From NCBI GenBank assembly GCA_965112155.1, contig OZ218108.1: 64,000 bases of DNA; one strand, written 5' to 3'. Numbering within the stretch: position 1 is the first letter of the stretch; each line of letters opens with the position of its first letter. The DNA is from Podarcis liolepis (lineage: Eukaryota). The notes under the pieces are model-generated. The model made no database searches and had not been told where the DNA came from. It saw only the letters and a program-made list of their open reading frames with translations. A program made the translations under genes and the position numbers. This document shows positions 6,126-51,481 of this stretch, piece after piece.

Positions 6126-6591
6126 TGCAAAATAATCGTATTGATTTGTGGTACAAACAGGAGGAAAGCAAGAACCCCTAAAAGATGATTTCAAGAGTTA
6201 ACATCTTGCCTAACATCTCAAAAACTTGCCACGATTTTGTAAGATTTTGGATAATTCCAATAAAGTTATTTCTCAGCTGTGAACTGTGAATCTTTTTCTT
6301 ATGGACTAACATAGCTACATTTGCTTTTAATAATATTTACATTATTGATTACTTTCCCCCACAACCTTATTTTATGTATCTTACATTTCATGACAAAAAT
6401 ACAATGACTCATTTTTCATTTCTGTAGAGGGTGGACACAAATAAGGAACTCTCTTCCCCGTCCCCACAAAAAAGAAACTTCTGAAATTCAGCATACTGTA
6501 ATCCACATGCTACTGTCAGTCCCCATCAGCTCAGATCCCATCCATGTATCATATATGTGAGGATTTTTTTCACAGTGTATATCACTATATA

Positions 6592-6818
6592 CAGTTACAG
6601 ATAGGTAGCTGTGTTGGTCTGCCATAGTCAAAATAAAAAAATTCCTTCCAGTAGCACCTTAAAGACCAACTAAGTTAGTTCTAGGTATGAGCTTTCGTGT
6701 GCATGCACACTTCTTCAGATACACACTGAATCTGAAGAAGTGTGCATGCACACGAAAGCTCATACCAAGAACTAACTTAGTTGGTCTTTAAGGTGCTACT
6801 GGAAGGAATTTTTTTATT
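6592..6818. mobile_element. Penelope-like retroelement terminal-repeat (pLTR) remnant arranged as an inverted repeat
   Basis: 89-bp arms 6632-6720 and 6730-6818 (1 mismatch, 9-nt spacer). Flanking direct repeat TATCACTATATA at 6580-6591 and 6818-6829. The motif CTGAAGAAG..CACGAAAGCTCA..GTCTTTAAGGTGCTAC resembles reptile Penelope ends as I recall them. Confidence 0.8.
6685..6722 (-). ncRNA. Minimal type I hammerhead ribozyme motif (Penelope-associated)
   Basis: Minus strand reads GTAT-CTGAAGA-A-GTGTG(CATG)CACAC-GAA-AGCT-C-ATAC: helix I GUAU/AUAC, CUGAnGA core, helix II, GAAA, palindromic AGCU helix III, and a UC cleavage site. Confidence 0.7.
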
Positions 6819-6942
6819 ATCACTATATAGTTACTTACACTGAACCACATTTGTGAGAACAGTCCATCTATTCCTACTTTTTCAGTTTAAAAAGTCAACT
6901 AAATATGTGCTGGTATATCAAATGAAAATCTACAACGATATT

Positions 6943-7430
6943 GGGTTGGATCCAGAGTTTCGTGCATAATGTGAGGGGTGCAAGCTTCCTTCCTTGCTCT
7001 TTATTTCCATGGAAAAATACTCCCCCAATACTCCACTGAATGACAGAGGATTTCATTTTACAATTCATGTGTTAAAGAAAGTGTACATAGTAGGGCTAGT
7101 ACAAGTTGACTTTCCTACTTCTACCTTCCCATATCAGTCCTCTGCAAAAACTCTACCAAGGGTCAGGGGACCCTGCTGAATGGAGTAGCTGTGGCATGGG
7201 CATTGAGGGAGAACACAAAAAATCAGTAGCAGCATCCTCCATAAAGTGAAGCTGGAAGTTGCCTCTACCCAATTTACAGGGGTCTCCCCTTATCTCCCCC
7301 CCCCATTGCCATACCACAGCCCACTCCATTCAGCAGAGTTCCTGACCTTTGGGGAAATGTTTGTAGGGGACTGATGTGAAAAATCAACTTGTGCCAACCC
7401 CATATGCACACTTAAATCAGGATCTAGCCC
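6943..7430. mobile_element. Larger foldback element(s) with internal inverted repeat
   Basis: Termini GGGTTGGATCC / GGATCTAGCCC; imperfect arms about 7100-7205 and 7305-7395 (CTGCTGAATGGAGT / ACTCCATTCAGCAG). Confidence 0.55.
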
Positions 7431-15502: not shown

Positions 15503-15647
15503 TGGGCCACCTAGCTCAGTATGGCTGACTGATGGGCAGATTTTAGGCAGACATCTCTCTCAGCCCGATTTGGACATGCCAGGGATTGAACCTGGAGTCT
15601 TCTGCATGCAAAGTAGAGGTTCTACCACTGAGCCATGGCCCTTCCCC
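15503..15647 (-). mobile_element. tRNA-Ala-like SINE
   Basis: Minus strand GGGGAAGGGCCATGGCTCAGTGGTAGAA..TTTGCATGCAGAAG..GGTTCAATCCCTGGCA with A and B boxes. Confidence 0.7.
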
Positions 15648-28542: not shown

Positions 28543-29739
28543 CCCTACACTTTCTGTCACTCAATGAGCAGCTGAGATAACTGAGTAGCTTTCAGATCAG
28601 CTACAGCAGAAGTAGGGAACTCGGTTTAGATGGATCACCAGATCCTTCCCCACTCCTTGTGGGTCAACTTAACAGGTGGGCAGATCACTGACCTGTCAAT
28701 CAACAGATGGGATAATAACATCAAGTGTTTGACACCAGTGAAAGTTCATAGGCAGTGGCTGTAACAGCCGATCAGCTGATCAATGATTACAGCAACTTTC
28801 TTTGAAGACATGCTTTCTGCACCAGTCAACTGATTAGGGTGCTAGGTGTGTGCTTTCCAAGAGGCTCTTTAAACCACGGTTCTCCATTTCAAAAGTAATG
28901 GGGGATCTGTGGTTTTATGTTGGTTTACTAATCAGGAAAAAAACATGGTTTAAGATCCTGTGCTGCTTAATAAACCAACATTAATACACAGTTATCTGTT
29001 TGGAATGAAGCAGGAAACTGTGGTTTTTAAAGCCCAGGAATCCACACCATAATCAGCATATTAGAGAGGTGGGGAAGAAAGAGTTGGCCTGATTCGCAGC
29101 TTTATAGTTTACAAAGCTAGAAATGTTACATTTTAAAAAGGCCCTGTAAAACCCTTTGTTATTTAAAACAGGCTTATAAACTAAGCTGACTTTTCTTTCA
29201 TGGAACAATAGAGGATTAGTACCTGCTTTGGCAGCTAATACAGAAGCTAATAGAAAAATTGCTCTCTTTTTTCACTTTTTGAATTAGCTGCAGATGGTTC
29301 ACACTATGTCAGAAGAGAAAGTAAAAAGCAGCCCAATAACAAAATAATTTGCAAAACTCTACAAAAATTATGACTTTTAGGATTTAAGGGATTGTTATCC
29401 CTATAATCATGTTTGGAGTCCTACTAATTTCAGCTAAACTTCCAGTTGTTTTGAAGAACTAAAAACAATATTGTACATCTTTCTTAACTTCTGTAAGAAT
29501 CTGTTTTGTTAAAAATATATATACTGGAAGTTGCAGCTTCTTGCAACTAATGACATATCCAAACAGAAAAGATGTGAGGAACATTTATATGCCTGCATTG
29601 CTATATATACAGTATACATTTTCAAATCTATAGCAGGAGCTTTTGATAGTGAAAAAAAGCTCTTTTGAAAATCTCACGAAACAACTATTGAATGCATTAT
29701 CAGACATTAAAAACCAAAATGCTTTGAACTGTGACTTAC

Positions 29740-30047
29740 TTCCCAGAGGTGTTGGGTGTTCCTTGTGGCTCCGGCTTGCACCTTTTCTGGCAGAAGGAGA
29801 ACTCCCTGGAAAGGCCCGATCCAGGTGCCCTGCTGAATCCTTTGAGCAGCACAGATGCCATAGGCCAAACCAGGCACAGTGCTGGTGCACAGACACACTT
29901 CCCGGGGCAGATCCCGAAGCCACTCAGGAATCTCAGGTGGAGGGGCGGCGGCAGCAGCACTACTAGTGCCCACCAGACGGCGTAAAGAGTGCAAAGGGCC
30001 ATGCATGGGGCACTCTCCATTACGATTATCTGCACACATGTCACATC
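29740..30047 (-). CDS. PRDM6: PRDM6 exon 3 (308 nt): PR zinc knuckle C-x2-C-x7-C-x2-H and N-terminal part of the PR/SET domain
   Basis: Acceptor ctttgctctgTAG|GA (AG at 30049-30048). C from exon 2 plus GA gives Arg, continuing [20 protein letters not shown]...GTWIGPFQG...NTQHLWE. Donor GAA|GTAAGT with GT at 29739-29738. Phases join correctly. Confidence 0.96.
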
Positions 30048-32759: not shown

Positions 32760-32950
32760 GCTGGGACAGCTCAGCTAGTACAGCATAAGACTCTTAATCT
32801 CAGGGTTGTGGGTTTGAGCCCCACGTTGGGCAAAGCATTCCTGCATTGCAAGGGATACACTAGATCACCCTTGTGTTCCCTTCCAACTCTACAATTCTAT
32901 GATTCTTGGGCACAAACAACTAGTTACCTTCCAATTCTAAGATTCTATGA
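32760..32950 (+). mobile_element. tRNA-Lys(CTT)-derived SINE with CR1-type 3' tail
   Basis: Head AGCTCAG..AGCATAAGACTCTTAATCTCAGGGTTGTGGGTTTGAGCCCCACGTTGGGC followed by CCCTTCCAACTCTACAATTCTATGATTCT. A second tail copy lies at 32927-32950. Confidence 0.8.
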
Positions 32951-47290: not shown

Positions 47291-48835
47291 GCCTTTTTGC
47301 TAAGGAACTGTGTGTTTCGTGACATTGTTTCAATTAAAAAGAACCACCCGCGTTACCGTTAGCACTGGGAAGTTTCCTCAACTCGTTGGAAAAAATATAT
47401 ACAAACTTTCTAAGTTACCGGTACATTGAAATTGCGTTTTTCCTGCTCCATGCACTGACCAGTTAAACTGGACTATTTATTTTTAAACCGATTTCCATCC
47501 CATTTACGTCCAGGTTCAGCAAGGTTTAGAATGCAAGCACTTTCTGTTTAAACAAGTTGCGGGCTTCTTTTCGCCAGTCCTTGCAAAGTCTCTGAGCTTG
47601 CATCTTTCAGCCCAGAGCACATTTACTCCAAATCTCCTCGTTTTGATAGCATTTGTTTTCATACAAATATTGTGAGGATCGGTTGTAAAGTCATCCAAGT
47701 GCAAATATTGTTTAACCGTAGTTCGTGAAACTACAAAAATACTTAAAAAAACAAACCCGTATTTCAACAGGAGAAATAGTGTTTAAAAGCTACGCATGTG
47801 CCATTGATAAGGTTGATTGCTCCTAACTATGCCAATAATAATACATAATGTTATGTATTATGAAAAGATTTTAAGCAATTCCAAAGGCGTACAAGTAAAG
47901 GAACATGCTGTAATTGAGAAAAGGGTATTTGGTCAAATCCACACTTCAAAAAAGAAACGTAACAGGGCAGTCCTTGGTGTGTCTACTCAAAAGTAAGCCC
48001 TACTCCGTTTAAACTTACACCAGGGTAAGTGTGCATGGGGTTGCAGTTTAAATCTCACGAAGGGGGGCTTTTCGACTCCCCGGTTTTGTTTTGTTTTAAG
48101 GTCAATGTGGCGGTCTCAGTAATTCTGAAATCCCCCATAGCATATTGGTTTTGACACCCAATTAGGCTTTTGACATTTATACTTTTGAAAACAAACTTCC
48201 TATGGAACGAACGTGCCTCGCCTTTGACGCTAAGAAGGCAAACCCAGCTGCGTTGTGCTACTGGCAGGAACAAGGGCCGAAGGGAAAAGGATACAGTATT
48301 TTTAAAGGAGAAAAAAATAGCAGTTCCCTTATAAATAGCAAAACTTTTGTTTGTTTGTTCTCAATGTAGAAAAAACATCTTCCACACATTTTAGCTTTCC
48401 ATACAATATTTAAATAAAACATATTCATTTTTTAAAACAACAACAACCACCCTATTTTCAGCAAAGTTCTAGAAAGCATTTGGTATGCAGCCGGTCACTC
48501 TCCAGTCCTGCTATAGCGCTTCAGACGACCAGAAAGTCCTGCCTTGGCAATGCCCCGTTGTTGGGAGTGGGACTTATTTCGGAGTATGTGCTCTTGAGAC
48601 TTTGGGGGAAGTTACAAAGTTTCCCAGCGATCATTTAGGGGCATTCTGCAAGGAGGAGGCGTCTAAAGGCCGCAGCTTGAAGTGTTTTATTTAGTTCCAA
48701 GTAGTAAGTCTAGGAGCGTCTGCGTGTGCTGGATGACCAATTCTGCTTGGGGTGCCCTTAATTTAGGCTGCAATCTCATGCACGCAAAATCTCTGGGACT
48801 AAGCCCCACTACAGGGCTTAGTTTTGAGTCAAGGG

Positions 48836-48985
48836 CTTATTTATTTATTTTTTATTATTATTATTATTCGTACCACGCCCATCTGACTGGGTTGCCCCAG
48901 CCACTCTGGGCGGCTTCCAGCACACATAAAAACATAATAAAACATTGCACATTAAAAACTTCCCTATAGGGCTGCCTTCTAAAGG
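48836..48985 (-). mobile_element. L2 LINE 3' end
   Basis: (TAA)n/(AATA)n tail and TACCACGCCCATCTGACTGGG..CCAGCCACTCTGGGCGGC stem region; similar architecture to 11318-11480. Confidence 0.75.
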
Positions 48986-49171
48986 TTATATGGTTACTCA
49001 TCATATTGACGTAAGCTCCTTCTTCCATAAGCTCTCTTGACTTCAGTAACTCTCTCACTTTTGAGAGCGGGTCCTTTCTCTCCCCGCCCCGCCCCCCATT
49101 TGCACCCCAAACTTTCGCCAAAGTGGCTGTGCCTTGCCGCGCGTCGGGAAGGTTGGGTGGGGAGTACATAC

Positions 49172-49727
49172 GGTTGTTGGGGTCCCCGGTGTGCTGGTTG
49201 AGCGGGATGATCTCCATGCGCTGCTGCCCATACAGGTAATAGTCCAACTCCTCGGCGGTGCAGCGAAACCGGGCCGGCGCCCTCTCGCCGCCCTTGGCCA
49301 CCCCGCTGCCTCCTCCGCCCAGGTCCTTGGTCTGCAGGAGGGCGACCGGGGCTCCCGTCGGGGACTCGGAGCTCTGAATCGGTCCAAAGACGGGGATCTG
49401 CGCCACCGGCAGCGCAGTCAAGCTGGCCAGGGAAGCGACGGCGCACGAAGACGGCGCGGACGACGGTGTGGAGGAGGAGGAGGAAGACGACGAAGAGGAG
49501 GACAAGGAAGAGGACGAGGACGCCGCCGACGAGAGAGAGGCCGGCAGCGGGCGGAGGCTGTCAGCCTGGGGCTCGACGGCTCTCTCGGGCGCCTGGAGGT
49601 GACCTAGCAGCCCGGCGCCGCCTTTGAGCTGCTGGCTGCTGTGCGGGAACAGCTGCTGCCAGTGCTGGAGGTACGCGGGATCCACCTTGAGGAAAGCCGA
49701 TCCGCCGGGATCGCCGGGCTTCAGCAT
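49172..49727 (-). CDS. PRDM6: PRDM6 first coding exon (exon 2), 185 codons + 1 nt, phase 1
   Basis: Translation [29 protein letters not shown]...[33 protein letters not shown] matches the recalled PRDM6 N-terminus. Donor ACC|GTATGT with GT at 49171-49170. Upstream acceptor CAG (49740-49738) follows a long polypyrimidine tract and leaves 10 nt of 5'UTR (49737-49728). Confidence 0.96.
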
Positions 49728-50284
49728 CTCTGCGAGCCTGGAGGAGAGGAAGGAGGAGAGGGAGAGGGGAGAGAAAGAGCCGTGAGAGGCGCCGTCGGGA
49801 CTTTGCGCTCCGCAAGGCGTCCGGCGGCGAGGGGCTCAGAGTCTGAAGGATGCTACTCCCGACGGACTTCGACCCTCTCGGCAGCCGCTCCGATAGGGAG
49901 AGGAGGCGCATTTGGTGCCCGCCAACGGCTCAACGTCTGCCGCGATCCTGAGTTTCAGGGGGGGTGGGAGGGGAGGAAAGCGACCCCGGGGCACCCACTC
50001 TTGCCAGGGATCTGGCCTCCCCATCCCCAAATTGCTCCCAGGCGAGTAACATTCTGGATCGCGTTTGAGCTACCCACCTCCTTCCGCCGCCCCACCCCGG
50101 ACCGTCCCATCCTGCCAAGTTCTGGGGCAAGGGAAGTCCAGGGACCGAAGATCGCAAAGCGAAAGGGGGAGCGCGCCGCCAGCAAAACGCGCCAGGCCAC
50201 TTTTCTCCCTAGCGTCCCGGAGAGAAGTTGGCGCGCGGCGAGGCAACTTGAGCAGGAGGCGAAGGAGCCCGCCAGATCTCTTAC

Positions 50285-50760
50285 CCTGATCCCCCAGCCA
50301 TCTATAATCCCGCCCGCCTCTCTTTTACCTGGATCTCTTTGTGGGCTACCCGGATCTGAAGGCGCGCAGGGCTCTTCTCTCCCGGAGGAGATCCAGGGTC
50401 GTTGAGGGGAAGGAAAGTGGGGGCGGTGGGGAAGGGGGGCTGGAGAGATGATGTTCCCGAAAAGCTCCGCTCAAGCAGCGGGAGAGGCGCCCGAGCGGGG
50501 TTCGGACGGCGGGGACGTGGGGAGGCTGTCCCGCGTGGAGATCTCCGGCGTCTTCCTCGCTGGCTCTCGCCGCGGCGCTCTACGGCAGGAGCGGCGGGGC
50601 TCCGCTGCGCTCGGCGCTCTGGCAGCCTCCGGGCGAGACACGTGGGTTTTACGACAGCACTAAACACAAGCGTGTGAGGGAGCAAGGAGGGAGAGGGAGG
50701 AGAGGGAGGGGGAAAGAGCGGCGGATCGGAGCGCTGCTTAAACTCGCAACACAACCCCCA
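50285..50760 (-). other. PRDM6: Candidate non-coding exon 1 / TSS region of PRDM6 (5' limit uncertain)
   Basis: The acceptor at 49738 requires an upstream exon. Minus-strand donors AGG|GTAAGA (GT 50284-50283) and CAG|GTAAAA (GT 50328-50327) lie in the CpG-dense region about 550-590 nt upstream. Confidence 0.5.
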
Positions 50761-51481
50761 CCCTCCCCGCCGCGCGCAACCTCGCGTAGGTTAAGTTCAG
50801 AGCAGCCTGGTTCTTGAACAGGGCGAGAAGGCTGCGGCTGCTGCTGCTTCCGTCGTTTGCCAGACGGCTGGAGGGAAGGGGGGGAATCTGCGTTAGGGGC
50901 AGGGTTGGGGTCATTGGTAGACTTCTGGGTTCCGGAAGAGGGTGAAACGTCCCCAGGAGCCAACTGCTAGGGGTCGAGGTCCCTCCGCCCCCTATTTGAG
51001 GGGGTGGTCCGTCCCCCCCAGTGGATGGCCAGTGTCCATTCAAATGGTGTGCCGTGTCTTGTGATCGATTATGTGGGGCGCGACTTCTTTGCCCCTCCCT
51101 CCGTATTTGATTCAAGTTGGCACTCCTGAAAGTCTGCCCCTTCCCAGAGCCCAGGCTCCACCGAGCAAAACGCTTCGGAGTCCCCCCCAGCCCCACCCCA
51201 CCGATCGGCCTTGCTGGGTTCAGGACGTCACGTCGGCTCAGAGATATTCCAGTACTTAACCTGAGGCAGTGGTGTAGCGTGGGGGGTGCAGGGGGAGCCG
51301 AATAAAACCATTGGCTCATAACTTTCCCCTTGTTGGAAACAGGGTCCTCTTTCAAAGCCAAACCGCTTTGTAGCCTTTTTTTTGCGATTCACAAGCCACT
51401 TGGGTCGGTGCCAGGAGAACGTGCACCGAGCCGCTTCAAGACCTAAGGAAGCGCCTTGTGGATTCCATCATTATGTCGACG

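What the first reader, a model, noticed from the sequence alone, without database searches (positions are those of the whole stretch)
6580..6829. Hammerhead ribozyme in the PRDM6 sense strand, caged by its own antisense copy in an 89-bp hairpin
Seen: arms 6632-6720 and 6730-6818 are inverted repeats (88/89 identical, 9-nt spacer) inside a 12-bp duplication. The minus strand at 6722-6685 reads GUAU-CUGAAGA-A-GUGUG(CAUG)CACAC-GAA-AGCU-C-AUAC, a complete minimal hammerhead. The plus-strand copy (6730-6765) has lost half of helix I at the inversion junction. Established: Penelope-like retroelements carry minimal hammerheads with a palindromic helix III that are thought to cleave as dimers, so the motif class itself is known. 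Inference: the intact copy would be transcribed within PRDM6 intron 3. Its antisense arm is transcribed first and should base-pair with it, so the inverted layout could act as a built-in off switch. That might explain why such inserts are tolerated in introns, and the hairpin would also be a long dsRNA substrate for ADAR or Dicer.
Basis: partly seen in the sequence, partly recalled or inferred. Interest (0 to 1): 0.8.

Follow-up and report, generated by a model that had tools for sequence, protein, structure and literature searches.

The report
Fold-back Penelope-like insert with minimal hammerhead
This is one ordinary copy of a very abundant lizard jumping gene (a Penelope-like retroelement) that landed in a PRDM6 intron as a hairpin-shaped double copy. 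Its small self-cutting RNA motif is of a published type that is not expected to cut as a single copy.

Summary
A 238-bp insert (6592-6829, counting one copy of the duplication) lies between identical 12-nt target duplications. It consists of two head-to-head copies that form a 92-bp hairpin with a 3-nt loop. The minus strand at 6722-6685 meets every published feature of the Penelope-type minimal hammerhead. The plus copy lacks the first two bases of helix I. PRDM6 runs on the minus strand, so the intact motif is in the intron's sense strand.

Reads from two sister species show a very high-copy family with fold-back joints at many different points, tandem copies and solo copies. The hairpin is therefore an integration by-product, not a device placed around the ribozyme.

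Published single minimal hammerheads do not cut in vitro. No second sense copy lies in the window, and family RNA shows no read ends at the cut site. Family RNA does carry strand-specific A-to-G changes typical of ADAR, already published for Anolis Penelope elements. This locus itself had no RNA reads. The scan has noted such units many times in this genome.

The parts
6580..6591 (.). Target-site duplication, left copy (TATCACTATATA)
   Evidence: Exact 12/12 match to 6818-6829. Family reads lose all consensus just before 6592-6594, which marks the element's end (table 7).
6592..6631 (-). One-sided 40-nt 3' 'tail' of the minus-sense copy. It contains an AC-rich stretch (GACCAACACAGC, 6618->6607) that pairs with 6663-6677.
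   Evidence: Absent from the right arm. A second family boundary lies at 6629-6635 in DNA and RNA loose ends. A 30-40-bp tail at one end is the published Penelope-like signature. The stem 6606-6620 / 6663-6677 comes (I3) and the fold.
6632..6730 (-). Body of the minus-sense (PRDM6-sense) 5'-truncated copy. It includes 4 nt (TTCA, 6730->6727) of the parent sequence upstream of the hammerhead.
   Evidence: Left hairpin arm. Family reads continue past 6724 as TGAAACAGAAGTTGCC..., agreement 0.87-0.93. The window shares only TGAA before it switches to the inverted copy (table 7).
6685..6722 (-). Complete Penelope-type minimal hammerhead. Helix I is 6722-6719 / 6688-6685; core CUGAAGA 6718-6712; bulged A 6711; helix II 6710-6706 / 6701-6697 with loop CAUG; GAA 6696-6694; palindrome AGCU 6693-6690; C17 at 6689. 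The predicted cut lies between 6689 and 6688.
   Evidence: Sequence read directly. It is the only descriptor hit in the window, with 0 of 300 shuffles. The hammerhead-shaped fold scores -6.0 kcal/mol. No Rfam hammerhead model matches.
6724..6726 (.). 3-nt loop at the centre of the fold-back
6731..6817 (+). Inverted (plus-sense) copy. It starts inside helix I of its hammerhead, so the core 6732-6761 is intact but helix I is reduced to GAAU / AUAC. It ends without a tail.
   Evidence: Right hairpin arm. It fails the descriptor. At 6729, 93-94% of family DNA depth reads T where the window has A (table 3).
6818..6829 (.). Target-site duplication, right copy
   Evidence: Its letters resemble the start of the tail (7 of 9), which suggests joining by microhomology. 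That last point is my inference.
29737..30045 (-). Context: PRDM6 coding exon (aa 174-276 of turtle PRDM6, start of the PR/SET domain)
   Evidence: tblastn at 95-96% identity. PDB hits to PRDM12 and PRDM2 PR domains.
49170..49727 (-). Context: PRDM6 first coding exon (aa 1-173)
   Evidence: Homologues named PRDM6 in turtles, birds and mammals, E down to 1e-90. tblastn.

Best explanation
A 5'-truncated copy of a very high-copy Penelope-like (PLE-derived, non-coding) retroelement family inserted into an AT-rich site of a PRDM6 intron.

Likely origin (inferred):
1. Reverse transcription started at the distal start site, which gives the 40-nt tail.
2. It ran through the hammerhead to 4 nt beyond it.
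3. The new cDNA end (..ACTGAA-3') snapped back on its own TACA, 3 of 4 bases pairing across a 3-nt loop, and copied itself.
4. That made the head-to-head second arm, which was joined to the other target end near the tail boundary and left a 12-bp duplication.

The hammerhead is a passenger of the element's pseudo-LTR. At this locus it is a lone sense copy that needs a partner, or the element's protein, to cut. It is also locked in a 92-bp duplex whenever the intron is transcribed. It is therefore expected to do nothing, apart from offering a long dsRNA that ADAR can edit.

The anatomy, the family behaviour, the host gene and strand, and the family-level editing are shown. The snap-back route and the inactivity in vivo are inferred.
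For: - Anatomy: exact 12-nt duplication, 92-bp arms with 2 mismatches, 3-nt loop, one-sided 40-nt extension.
- Published Penelope-like signature: an inverted 5'-truncated copy next to the element, a 30-40-bp tail at one end, and short duplications of 8-10 bp (PMC8557442; PMC3846280). Palindromes at head-to-head junctions are read there as self-priming.
- The tail corresponds to two reverse-transcription start sites in the Anolis element PAc (PMC11167929).
- Motif: all min-HHR features of PMC4209133 are met. The PAc hammerhead in the published consensus has the same layout, CUGAGGA-U-G..C-GAA-ACGU-C (compared by eye).
- Family behaviour in two sister species: summed word depth of 4e5-1.6e6 on the element against 11-12 on the flanks; fold-back joints at many points (15 listed, 75 more); go-back joints 6724>6635/6644, which are tandem copies; family ends at 6592-6594 and 6629-6635.
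- Age: CpG decay relative to the family (GCCGTAGTCGAAA against gccatagtcaaaa). Single contigs of organisms B and E join both flanks with 242 and 235 nt between them, where an empty site would give 32.
- Symmetry: the two arms' 5' ends lie within 11 nt of each other, as snap-back predicts.
- Inactivity: single min-HHRs are uncleaved in vitro. The PAc motif is protein-assisted and shows no RNA-seq ends at its cut site. There is no other sense copy in 64 kb. No pile-up of read ends appears in about 1,170 family reads per run (table 6). Helix I and II pairing probability in the full transcript is 0.
Against: - There is no reverse transcriptase or GIY-YIG coding sequence here or elsewhere in the window, so the link to an autonomous Penelope-like master is by architecture only.
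- No Rfam hammerhead model scores the motif, even at E<=10 on 95 nt.
- I saw no letters of other family copies, only summary tables, so helix covariation was not tested.
- The contigs of the sister species have 28-35 nt less between the flanks than the window, unexplained.
- The mismatch at 6729 could be a later mutation of a perfect palindrome rather than a trace of the template.
- The Anolis PAc protein nicks and extends both target strands, which offers another route to inverted copies.
Confidence: 0.85

Rival explanations
1. Same element, different origin. The two arms are two separate cDNAs, each primed from one of the two staggered nicks (target-primed reverse transcription on both strands by a dimeric element protein) and joined in the middle.
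For: The Anolis PAc protein cleaves and extends both top and bottom strands and is predicted to be a dimer. It has two start sites, which would explain one arm with a tail and one without.
Against: Two independent cDNAs would need to stop within 11 nt of each other just upstream of the hammerhead. The junction is a near-perfect palindrome with a 3-nt loop, which is what self-templating gives. Arkhipova et al. read such junction palindromes as self-priming.
Confidence: 0.12
2. The inverted arm is a functional cage: it silences a ribozyme that would otherwise cut the PRDM6 pre-mRNA, and this explains why sense-oriented intronic copies are tolerated.
For: The duplex does fully sequester the motif in silico, and the antisense arm is transcribed first. 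PRDM6 is on the minus strand. Retrozyme-type hammerhead repeats are mildly depleted from introns in Xenopus.
Against: - Fold-back is the generic integration outcome of Penelope-like elements, including clades that lack hammerheads altogether.
- Joints in this family are scattered, and some remove the hammerhead from both arms.
- Lone min-HHRs do not cut in vitro, and 42-44% of Xenopus retrozyme sequences sit in introns anyway.
- Other notes of this scan report uncaged sense-strand intronic copies in this genome (unchecked).
- No expression of this locus was seen.
Confidence: 0.04
3. A palindromic miniature DNA transposon (MITE) with about 100-bp terminal inverted repeats, moved by a transposase.
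For: It is a short palindromic unit flanked by a direct duplication. Other notes record units of similar size (224-263 bp) elsewhere in the genome (unchecked).
Against: The ends are asymmetric, with a 40-nt tail on one side only. The family also occurs as single arms, tandems and fold-backs with many different joints, which is retro-copy behaviour. The arms carry a Penelope-type hammerhead.
Confidence: 0.02
4. The hairpin is a microRNA or small-RNA precursor.
For: Many Rfam miRNA-precursor models give hits with E down to 1e-12.
Against: All hits are far below their gathering scores (for example 60.7 against 90), fall on both strands and spread over dozens of unrelated families. This is what any long perfect hairpin gives. 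No hit at gathering level lies here. No small-RNA data were available.
Confidence: 0.02

Closest known systems
Minimal hammerhead ribozymes (min-HHR) of metazoan Penelope-like elements (Cervera & de la Pena 2014, PMC4209133)
   Same: Type I layout; core CUGANGA / GAA / H17; one unpaired base between positions 9 and 10.1; G10.1-C11.1; short 4-bp helix I; helix III reduced to a 4-nt palindrome (AGCU) that can pair only with a second copy. That paper also notes paired motifs on opposite strands 100-700 bp apart, and reports such motifs in reptiles.
   Different: Helix II is 5 bp with a 4-nt loop, against the 7-8 bp typical of the Schistosoma families, and it is itself a perfect 14-nt palindrome. 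In silico, two copies prefer to pair through helix II. Activity was not tested.
Poseidon_Ac (PAc) of Anolis carolinensis and its protein-assisted hammerhead (Frangieh et al. 2024, PMC11167929)
   Same: A lizard Penelope-like element with the same hammerhead layout (CUGAGGA-U-G..C-GAA-ACGU-C). Insertions end at two alternative internal start sites, which gives an optional tail. An AC-rich stem-loop lies some tens of nt downstream of the cut site. Targets are AT-rich.
   Different: There is no recognisable sequence similarity outside the core (by eye). In PAc the ORF starts in helix II. Here the AUG in loop II runs into a stop after 7-9 codons in both arms, so this family looks non-coding.
Inverted pseudo-LTR / fold-back insertions of Penelope-like elements (Arkhipova et al. 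2013, PMC3846280; Craig et al. 2021, PMC8557442)
   Same: Head-to-head inverted 5'-truncated copy, a palindrome at the junction, one-sided tail (31 bp, or 30-40 bp, in those papers), short duplication flanking the whole unit.
   Different: This is an extreme miniature: the copies are only 139 and 87 nt, with nothing between them. The duplication is 12 bp, against the 8-10 bp reported there.
Non-LTR retrozymes (tandem hammerhead repeats; PMC7229834; bioRxiv 10.64898/2026.07.22.740005)
   Same: Short non-coding units carrying a type I hammerhead, proposed to be non-autonomous derivatives of Penelope-like pseudo-LTRs. The family here also has head-to-tail joints, with a unit of about 96 nt.
   Different: This locus is a single fold-back, not a tandem, so no dimeric ribozyme or circular RNA is expected from it.
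ADAR hyper-editing of inverted repeats; lizard Penelope as a massively edited repeat (Porath et al. 2017, PMC5625713)
   Same: Family RNA shows strand-specific A-to-G changes on both polarities, with almost no DNA support.
   Different: It was seen here in another lizard lineage and only at family level. This locus had no reads.

Membership tests
Hammerhead ribozyme, Penelope-type minimal (min-HHR) | Catalytic core C3 U4 G5 A6 N7 G8 A9 ... G12 A13 A14 ... H17 | tested here: met
   Minus strand: CUGAAGA (6718-6712), GAA (6696-6694), C17 (6689)..
Hammerhead ribozyme, Penelope-type minimal (min-HHR) | [quoted passage not shown] | tested here: met
   A at 6711; G 6710 pairs with C 6697. The features are listed in PMC4209133. 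Descriptor hit.
Hammerhead ribozyme, Penelope-type minimal (min-HHR) | Helix III reduced to a palindrome (15.x-16.x), so that only a dimer can form it | tested here: met
   AGCU at 6693-6690.
Hammerhead ribozyme, Penelope-type minimal (min-HHR) | Helix I of 4-5 bp flanking the motif | tested here: met
   GUAU / AUAC on the minus strand. Not met by the plus copy (GAAU / AUAC), which fails the descriptor.
Hammerhead ribozyme, Penelope-type minimal (min-HHR) | Compensatory changes in helices across family members | not testable with these tools
   No other copy lies in the window. Public scans gave nothing related. Read laying returns tables, not sequences.
Hammerhead ribozyme, Penelope-type minimal (min-HHR) | Self-cleavage 3' of position 17 | tested here: inconclusive
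   No pile-up of read starts or ends at 6688/6689 or its mirror among about 1,170 family reads in each of two RNA runs (table 6). These reads come from other loci, and ordinary libraries are a weak test.
Rfam hammerhead families (types I, II, III, HH9, HH10) | Match to the covariance model | tested here: not met
   No hammerhead hit at E<=10 on 1.5 kb or on 95 nt. This is expected, because those models require a helix III hairpin. The motif is therefore filed only under the min-HHR class.
Penelope-like element insertion (5'-truncated / pseudo-LTR-derived unit) | Head-to-head inverted or tandem copies bounded by one target-site duplication | tested here: met
   Published criteria.
Penelope-like element insertion (5'-truncated / pseudo-LTR-derived unit) | Optional 30-40-bp tail at one end only | tested here: met
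   40 nt at 6592-6631 on the left copy only. Family boundaries at both 6592-6594 and 6629-6635.
Penelope-like element insertion (5'-truncated / pseudo-LTR-derived unit) | Hammerhead motif within the unit | tested here: met
Penelope-like element insertion (5'-truncated / pseudo-LTR-derived unit) | Sequence continuity with an element encoding a telomerase-like RT and a GIY-YIG endonuclease | not testable with these tools
   No such ORF lies at the locus, and the rest of the genome is not readable from here. The parent sequence upstream of the motif is known only as a 30-nt read consensus.
Non-LTR retrozyme | Tandem head-to-tail units, each with a hammerhead | tested here: not met
   This locus is a single fold-back. 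Tandem joints exist elsewhere in the family (table 5c).
microRNA precursor | Score at or above a family's gathering threshold | tested here: not met
   Best hit 60.7 bits against 90. Nothing here at gathering level.

The most novel reading that the evidence does not exclude
Fold-back Penelope-like copies may not be neutral debris. Among sense-oriented intronic insertions, the hairpin form might be kept preferentially because it blocks ribozyme folding, or because it marks the transcript as edited 'self' dsRNA. These miniature palindromes would then be the main ADAR substrate of lacertid lizards, and selection would shape which insertion architectures survive in genes.
Probability: 0.05. Interest if true: 0.55.

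Novelty: already known. Interest (0 to 1): 0.15.

Why it matters
It matters little as a discovery. The motif class, the fold-back-plus-tail insertion architecture and ADAR editing of lizard Penelope repeats are all published. This is one old copy among a very large family.

It is a clean, fully resolved miniature example: duplication, tail, snap-back junction with microhomology, and intact versus truncated hammerhead. That could illustrate the self-priming model of Penelope-like integration. The family-level reads also show that both RNA polarities of such units are edited in a second lizard lineage.

Tried and rejected
- Rfam hammerhead models: no hit on 1.5 kb or on 95 nt at E<=10. The many miRNA-family hits are generic long-hairpin matches below threshold and were rejected.
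- More copies in the window: three pattern searches found only the two arms.
- More copies in public metagenome contigs: the core pattern gave 0. A 21-mer from the arm gave two contigs that are chance matches in a bacterial-looking gene with no hammerhead.
- Earlier notes by sequence: blank.
- Coding capacity: the AUG in loop II meets a stop after 7 codons in the left arm and 9 in the right (read). I dropped the idea of a start codon inside the hammerhead, as in PAc, for this family.
- Sequence similarity to Poseidon_Ac: none outside the core, by eye only. The published consensus has no reference id, so it was not passed to any tool.
- Monomer fold: the 38-nt motif does adopt the hammerhead shape at -6.0 to -6.8 kcal/mol, but the 48-nt segment is no more stable than shuffles (z = -0.15).
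- Dimer fold: ViennaRNA pairs two copies through the palindromic helix II, not helix III. I draw no conclusion from this.
- Locus-specific expression or editing: no RNA reads on the unique flanks in either run, so nothing can be said.
The 140 N in the window were left alone.

Full report
**What is in the sequence.**
Between 6580 and 6829 lies an insertion bounded by an exact 12-nt direct repeat, TATCACTATATA, at 6580-6591 and 6818-6829. Inside it are two copies of the same sequence, head to head. The pairing is symmetric about 6725. The arms 6632-6723 and 6727-6818 are complementary except at 6683/6767 and 6721/6729, and the loop is 3 nt.

The repeat finder stretches the arms to 6624/6826. That extension is only a 6-of-8 resemblance between the start of the left copy's extra sequence and the target duplication. 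The left copy carries 40 further nucleotides (6592-6631) with no partner on the right.

As RNA the region folds into one long hairpin at -179.3 kcal/mol. Shuffles give -63 ± 5, so z = -22. The loop is shorter than stated, and the one-sided extension was overlooked.

**The hammerhead.**
The minus strand 6722->6685 reads GUAU-CUGAAGA-A-GUGUG(CAUG)CACAC-GAA-AGCU-C-AUAC. I wrote a strict descriptor with these elements:
- a 4-bp helix I;
- the core CUGANGA;
- an optional bulge;
- a G...C-closed helix II of 4-8 bp;
- GAA;
- a palindromic A..U helix III;
- H17.

It finds this site and nothing else on either strand of the 64-kb window, and nothing in 300 block shuffles.

Cervera and de la Pena (PMC4209133) list features that emerged for the minimal hammerheads of Penelope-like elements (PLEs). 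They are the extra base between positions 9 and 10.1, the G10.1-C11.1 pair, the palindromic 15.2-16.2, a short helix I and a relatively long helix II. All are present. The published Anolis element Poseidon_Ac has the same layout at its pseudo-LTR/ORF junction, CUGAGGA-U-G..C-GAA-ACGU-C (by eye).

No Rfam hammerhead model scores the motif, even at E<=10 on 95 nt. That is expected, because the motif has no helix III hairpin. I file it under the min-HHR class only.

The plus-strand copy has an intact core (6732-6761) but GAAU instead of GUAU, and it fails the descriptor.

**Host gene and strand.**
The 287-codon ORF at 49727-48864 (minus) finds proteins named PRDM6 in turtles, birds and mammals, with E down to 1e-90. 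tblastn of four of those proteins places aa 1-173 at 49727-49170 and aa 174-276 at 30045-29737, both on the minus strand, and finds nothing further in the window. The second exon also hits PR domains of PRDM12 and PRDM2 in the PDB.

The element therefore lies in the PRDM6 intron that follows the second coding exon. The label 'intron 3' was not verified.

**What kind of element it is.**
The PLE literature describes this architecture:
- Insertions are highly 5'-truncated.
- An inverted 5'-truncated copy often lies immediately adjacent, forming inverted repeats.
- A 30-40-bp tail is often present at one end only (PMC8557442).
- Rotifer examples have 8-10-bp duplications and a 31-bp tail on one of the inverted pseudo-LTRs.
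- Palindromes at head-to-head junctions are interpreted as self-priming (PMC3846280).

For the Anolis element, the tail corresponds to the stretch between two internal reverse-transcription start sites near an AC-rich stem-loop. The purified protein also nicks and extends both target strands (PMC11167929).

The locus here has the 12-bp duplication, the head-to-head copies and the one-sided 40-nt tail. Within that tail is an AC-rich strand (6618->6607) that pairs with 6663-6677 (I3).

**Family evidence from reads.**
I laid contigs of two related species (coded B and E) and raw stranded RNA reads of E on 6250-7150.

1. *Copy number.* Summed word depth is 11-12 on the flanks and 4e5 to 1.6e6 on the element. 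This is not a copy number, but it shows a very high-copy family.
2. *Family ends.* Loose ends lose all consensus just before 6592-6594, and again near 6629-6635. These are the two 3' ends, with and without the tail.
3. *Upstream sequence.* Beyond 6724 most RNA reads continue with one consensus, TGAAACAGAAGTTGCC..., at agreement 0.87-0.93. This is the parent sequence upstream of the hammerhead. The window shares only TGAA (6727-6730) and then switches to the inverted copy. At 6729, 93-94% of the DNA depth reads T.
4. *Scattered joints.* Fifteen listed joints and 75 unlisted ones connect the two arms at many different points, for example 6653>6744, 6675>6775 and 6722>6756. Several are nearly symmetric at positions downstream of the hammerhead. 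Go-back joints 6724>6635/6644 show head-to-tail tandems of about 96 nt.
5. *Site occupancy.* In both species a single contig joins the two unique flanks with 242 nt (B) or 235 nt (E) between them. The window has 270 nt and an empty site would give 32. The site is therefore filled in both species and the insertion is old. That fits the CpG decay of the window copy relative to the family (GCCGTAGTCGAAA against gccatagtcaaaa). I could not see those letters, and the 28-35-nt difference is unexplained.

**How the hairpin probably arose (inference).**
The plus strand of the left copy is the first-strand cDNA. It runs from the tail (6592) to 6730, and its 3' end ...ACACTGAA can pair with its own TACA (6720-6723) at 3 of 4 positions across a 3-nt loop. 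Extension from there reproduces the right arm exactly.

The two arms' 5' ends lie within 11 nt of each other. Self-templating predicts this; two independent cDNAs would reach it only by coincidence. The right arm stops at the tail boundary, where the tail's first bases resemble the target (7 of 9). That suggests joining by microhomology.

I prefer this snap-back route, but the two-strand priming route of PAc is not excluded.

**Does the ribozyme or its cage do anything?**
In silico the cage is real. In the 291-nt minus-strand transcript, every helix I and helix II pair has probability 0.0 and the inter-arm pairs have at least 0.999. But there is little to cage:
- Single min-HHRs showed no cleavage in vitro, and dimers or trimers showed only low activity.
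- The Anolis hammerhead cuts only with the element's protein, is not needed for insertion, and leaves no RNA-seq ends at its cut site.
- The window holds no second sense copy that could supply the dimer partner.
- Among about 1,170 family reads in each RNA run, no position shows a pile-up of starts or ends (table 6).

Fold-backs also occur in PLE clades without hammerheads, and at scattered junctions in this family. In Xenopus, 42-44% of retrozyme-type hammerhead repeats sit in introns, with only mild depletion. I therefore read the hairpin as an integration by-product.

**RNA editing.**
Neither RNA run has a single read on the unique flanks, with about 12% of each run read. This locus is therefore not seen as expressed. 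98% of the reads on the element run on into unlike sequence, so they come from other copies, and the two orientations are about equal.

Within those reads there are differences with almost no DNA support (under 0.15% of depth), and they are strictly strand-specific:
- T>C at 6659, 6660, 6671, 6763, 6773 and 6778 almost only when the first mate lies on +. For example, at 6671 the counts are 62/273 against 1/211 in one run and 90/189 against 0/214 in the other.
- A>G at 6779 and 6790 only when the first mate lies on -. For example, at 6779 the counts are 32/83 against 0/136.
- Sites 6671/6779 and 6660/6790 are mirror positions of the two arms.

With the usual library convention, in which the first mate is antisense to the RNA, all eight changes are A-to-G in the RNA's own sense, on both polarities. 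That is the ADAR signature. One further RNA-only change (6618 T>G) does not fit.

It is already known: Porath et al. found Penelope to be the massively edited repeat of the Anolis brain, with over 40,000 sites (PMC5625713).

**Earlier notes of this scan.**
By words, 115 notes in this genome mention hammerhead and Penelope. They include several fold-back units of 224-263 letters in other introns, and one followed-up Penelope/Poseidon element. Another note calls the genome a wall lizard. I did not check these notes. They agree that the structure is commonplace here.

**Verdict.**
The class assignment, the strand and the physical sequestration are supported. The functional off-switch reading is not supported. 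The finding is an ordinary, old, miniature fold-back insertion of a known kind of retroelement.

Noticed in passing
window 15571-15640 (-) and 32769-32832 (+): Two matches to the tRNA model just above its gathering score (37.5 and 31.9 bits). They lie inside the PRDM6 intron and are probably heads of tRNA-derived SINEs rather than tRNA genes.
   Followed up: no
window 48800-51400: A stretch dense with long ORFs on both strands surrounds the first PRDM6 coding exon (49170-49727, minus). It looks like a GC-rich CpG-island promoter region.
   Followed up: partly
window 6635 and mirror 6815 (family level, organism E RNA): A sub-population of family transcripts continues past the tail-less 3' boundary with its own consensus, agreement 0.6-0.7, about 90 reads per run. 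It is either a longer relative or one highly expressed locus, and it was not identified (table 7).
   Followed up: no
window 6618: An RNA-only, strand-specific T>G (15/208 and 47/200 against 0-1 on the other orientation; none in DNA). It is not an ADAR-type change and is unexplained (table 3).
   Followed up: no
window 6754 and 6689/6761 (family level): About 10% of family DNA depth has G12>A at the CpG in CACACGAAA, which is a dead core produced by CpG decay. Position 17 is C or U in different copies: 78% U-type at 6689, 9-29% at 6761. Both are consistent with neutral decay after insertion (table 3).
   Followed up: partly
window 6697-6710 (and 6740-6753): Helix II plus its loop is a perfect 14-nt palindrome (GUGUGCAUGCACAC). 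It therefore reads the same in the antisense arm, and in silico two sense copies pair through it (-34.4 kcal/mol) rather than through helix III.
   Followed up: partly
L001 1972-1992, L002 555-575: Two metagenome contigs share a 21-mer with the element's arm. They are a near-identical pair from a bacterial-looking coding region with no hammerhead, so this is a chance match.
   Followed up: yes
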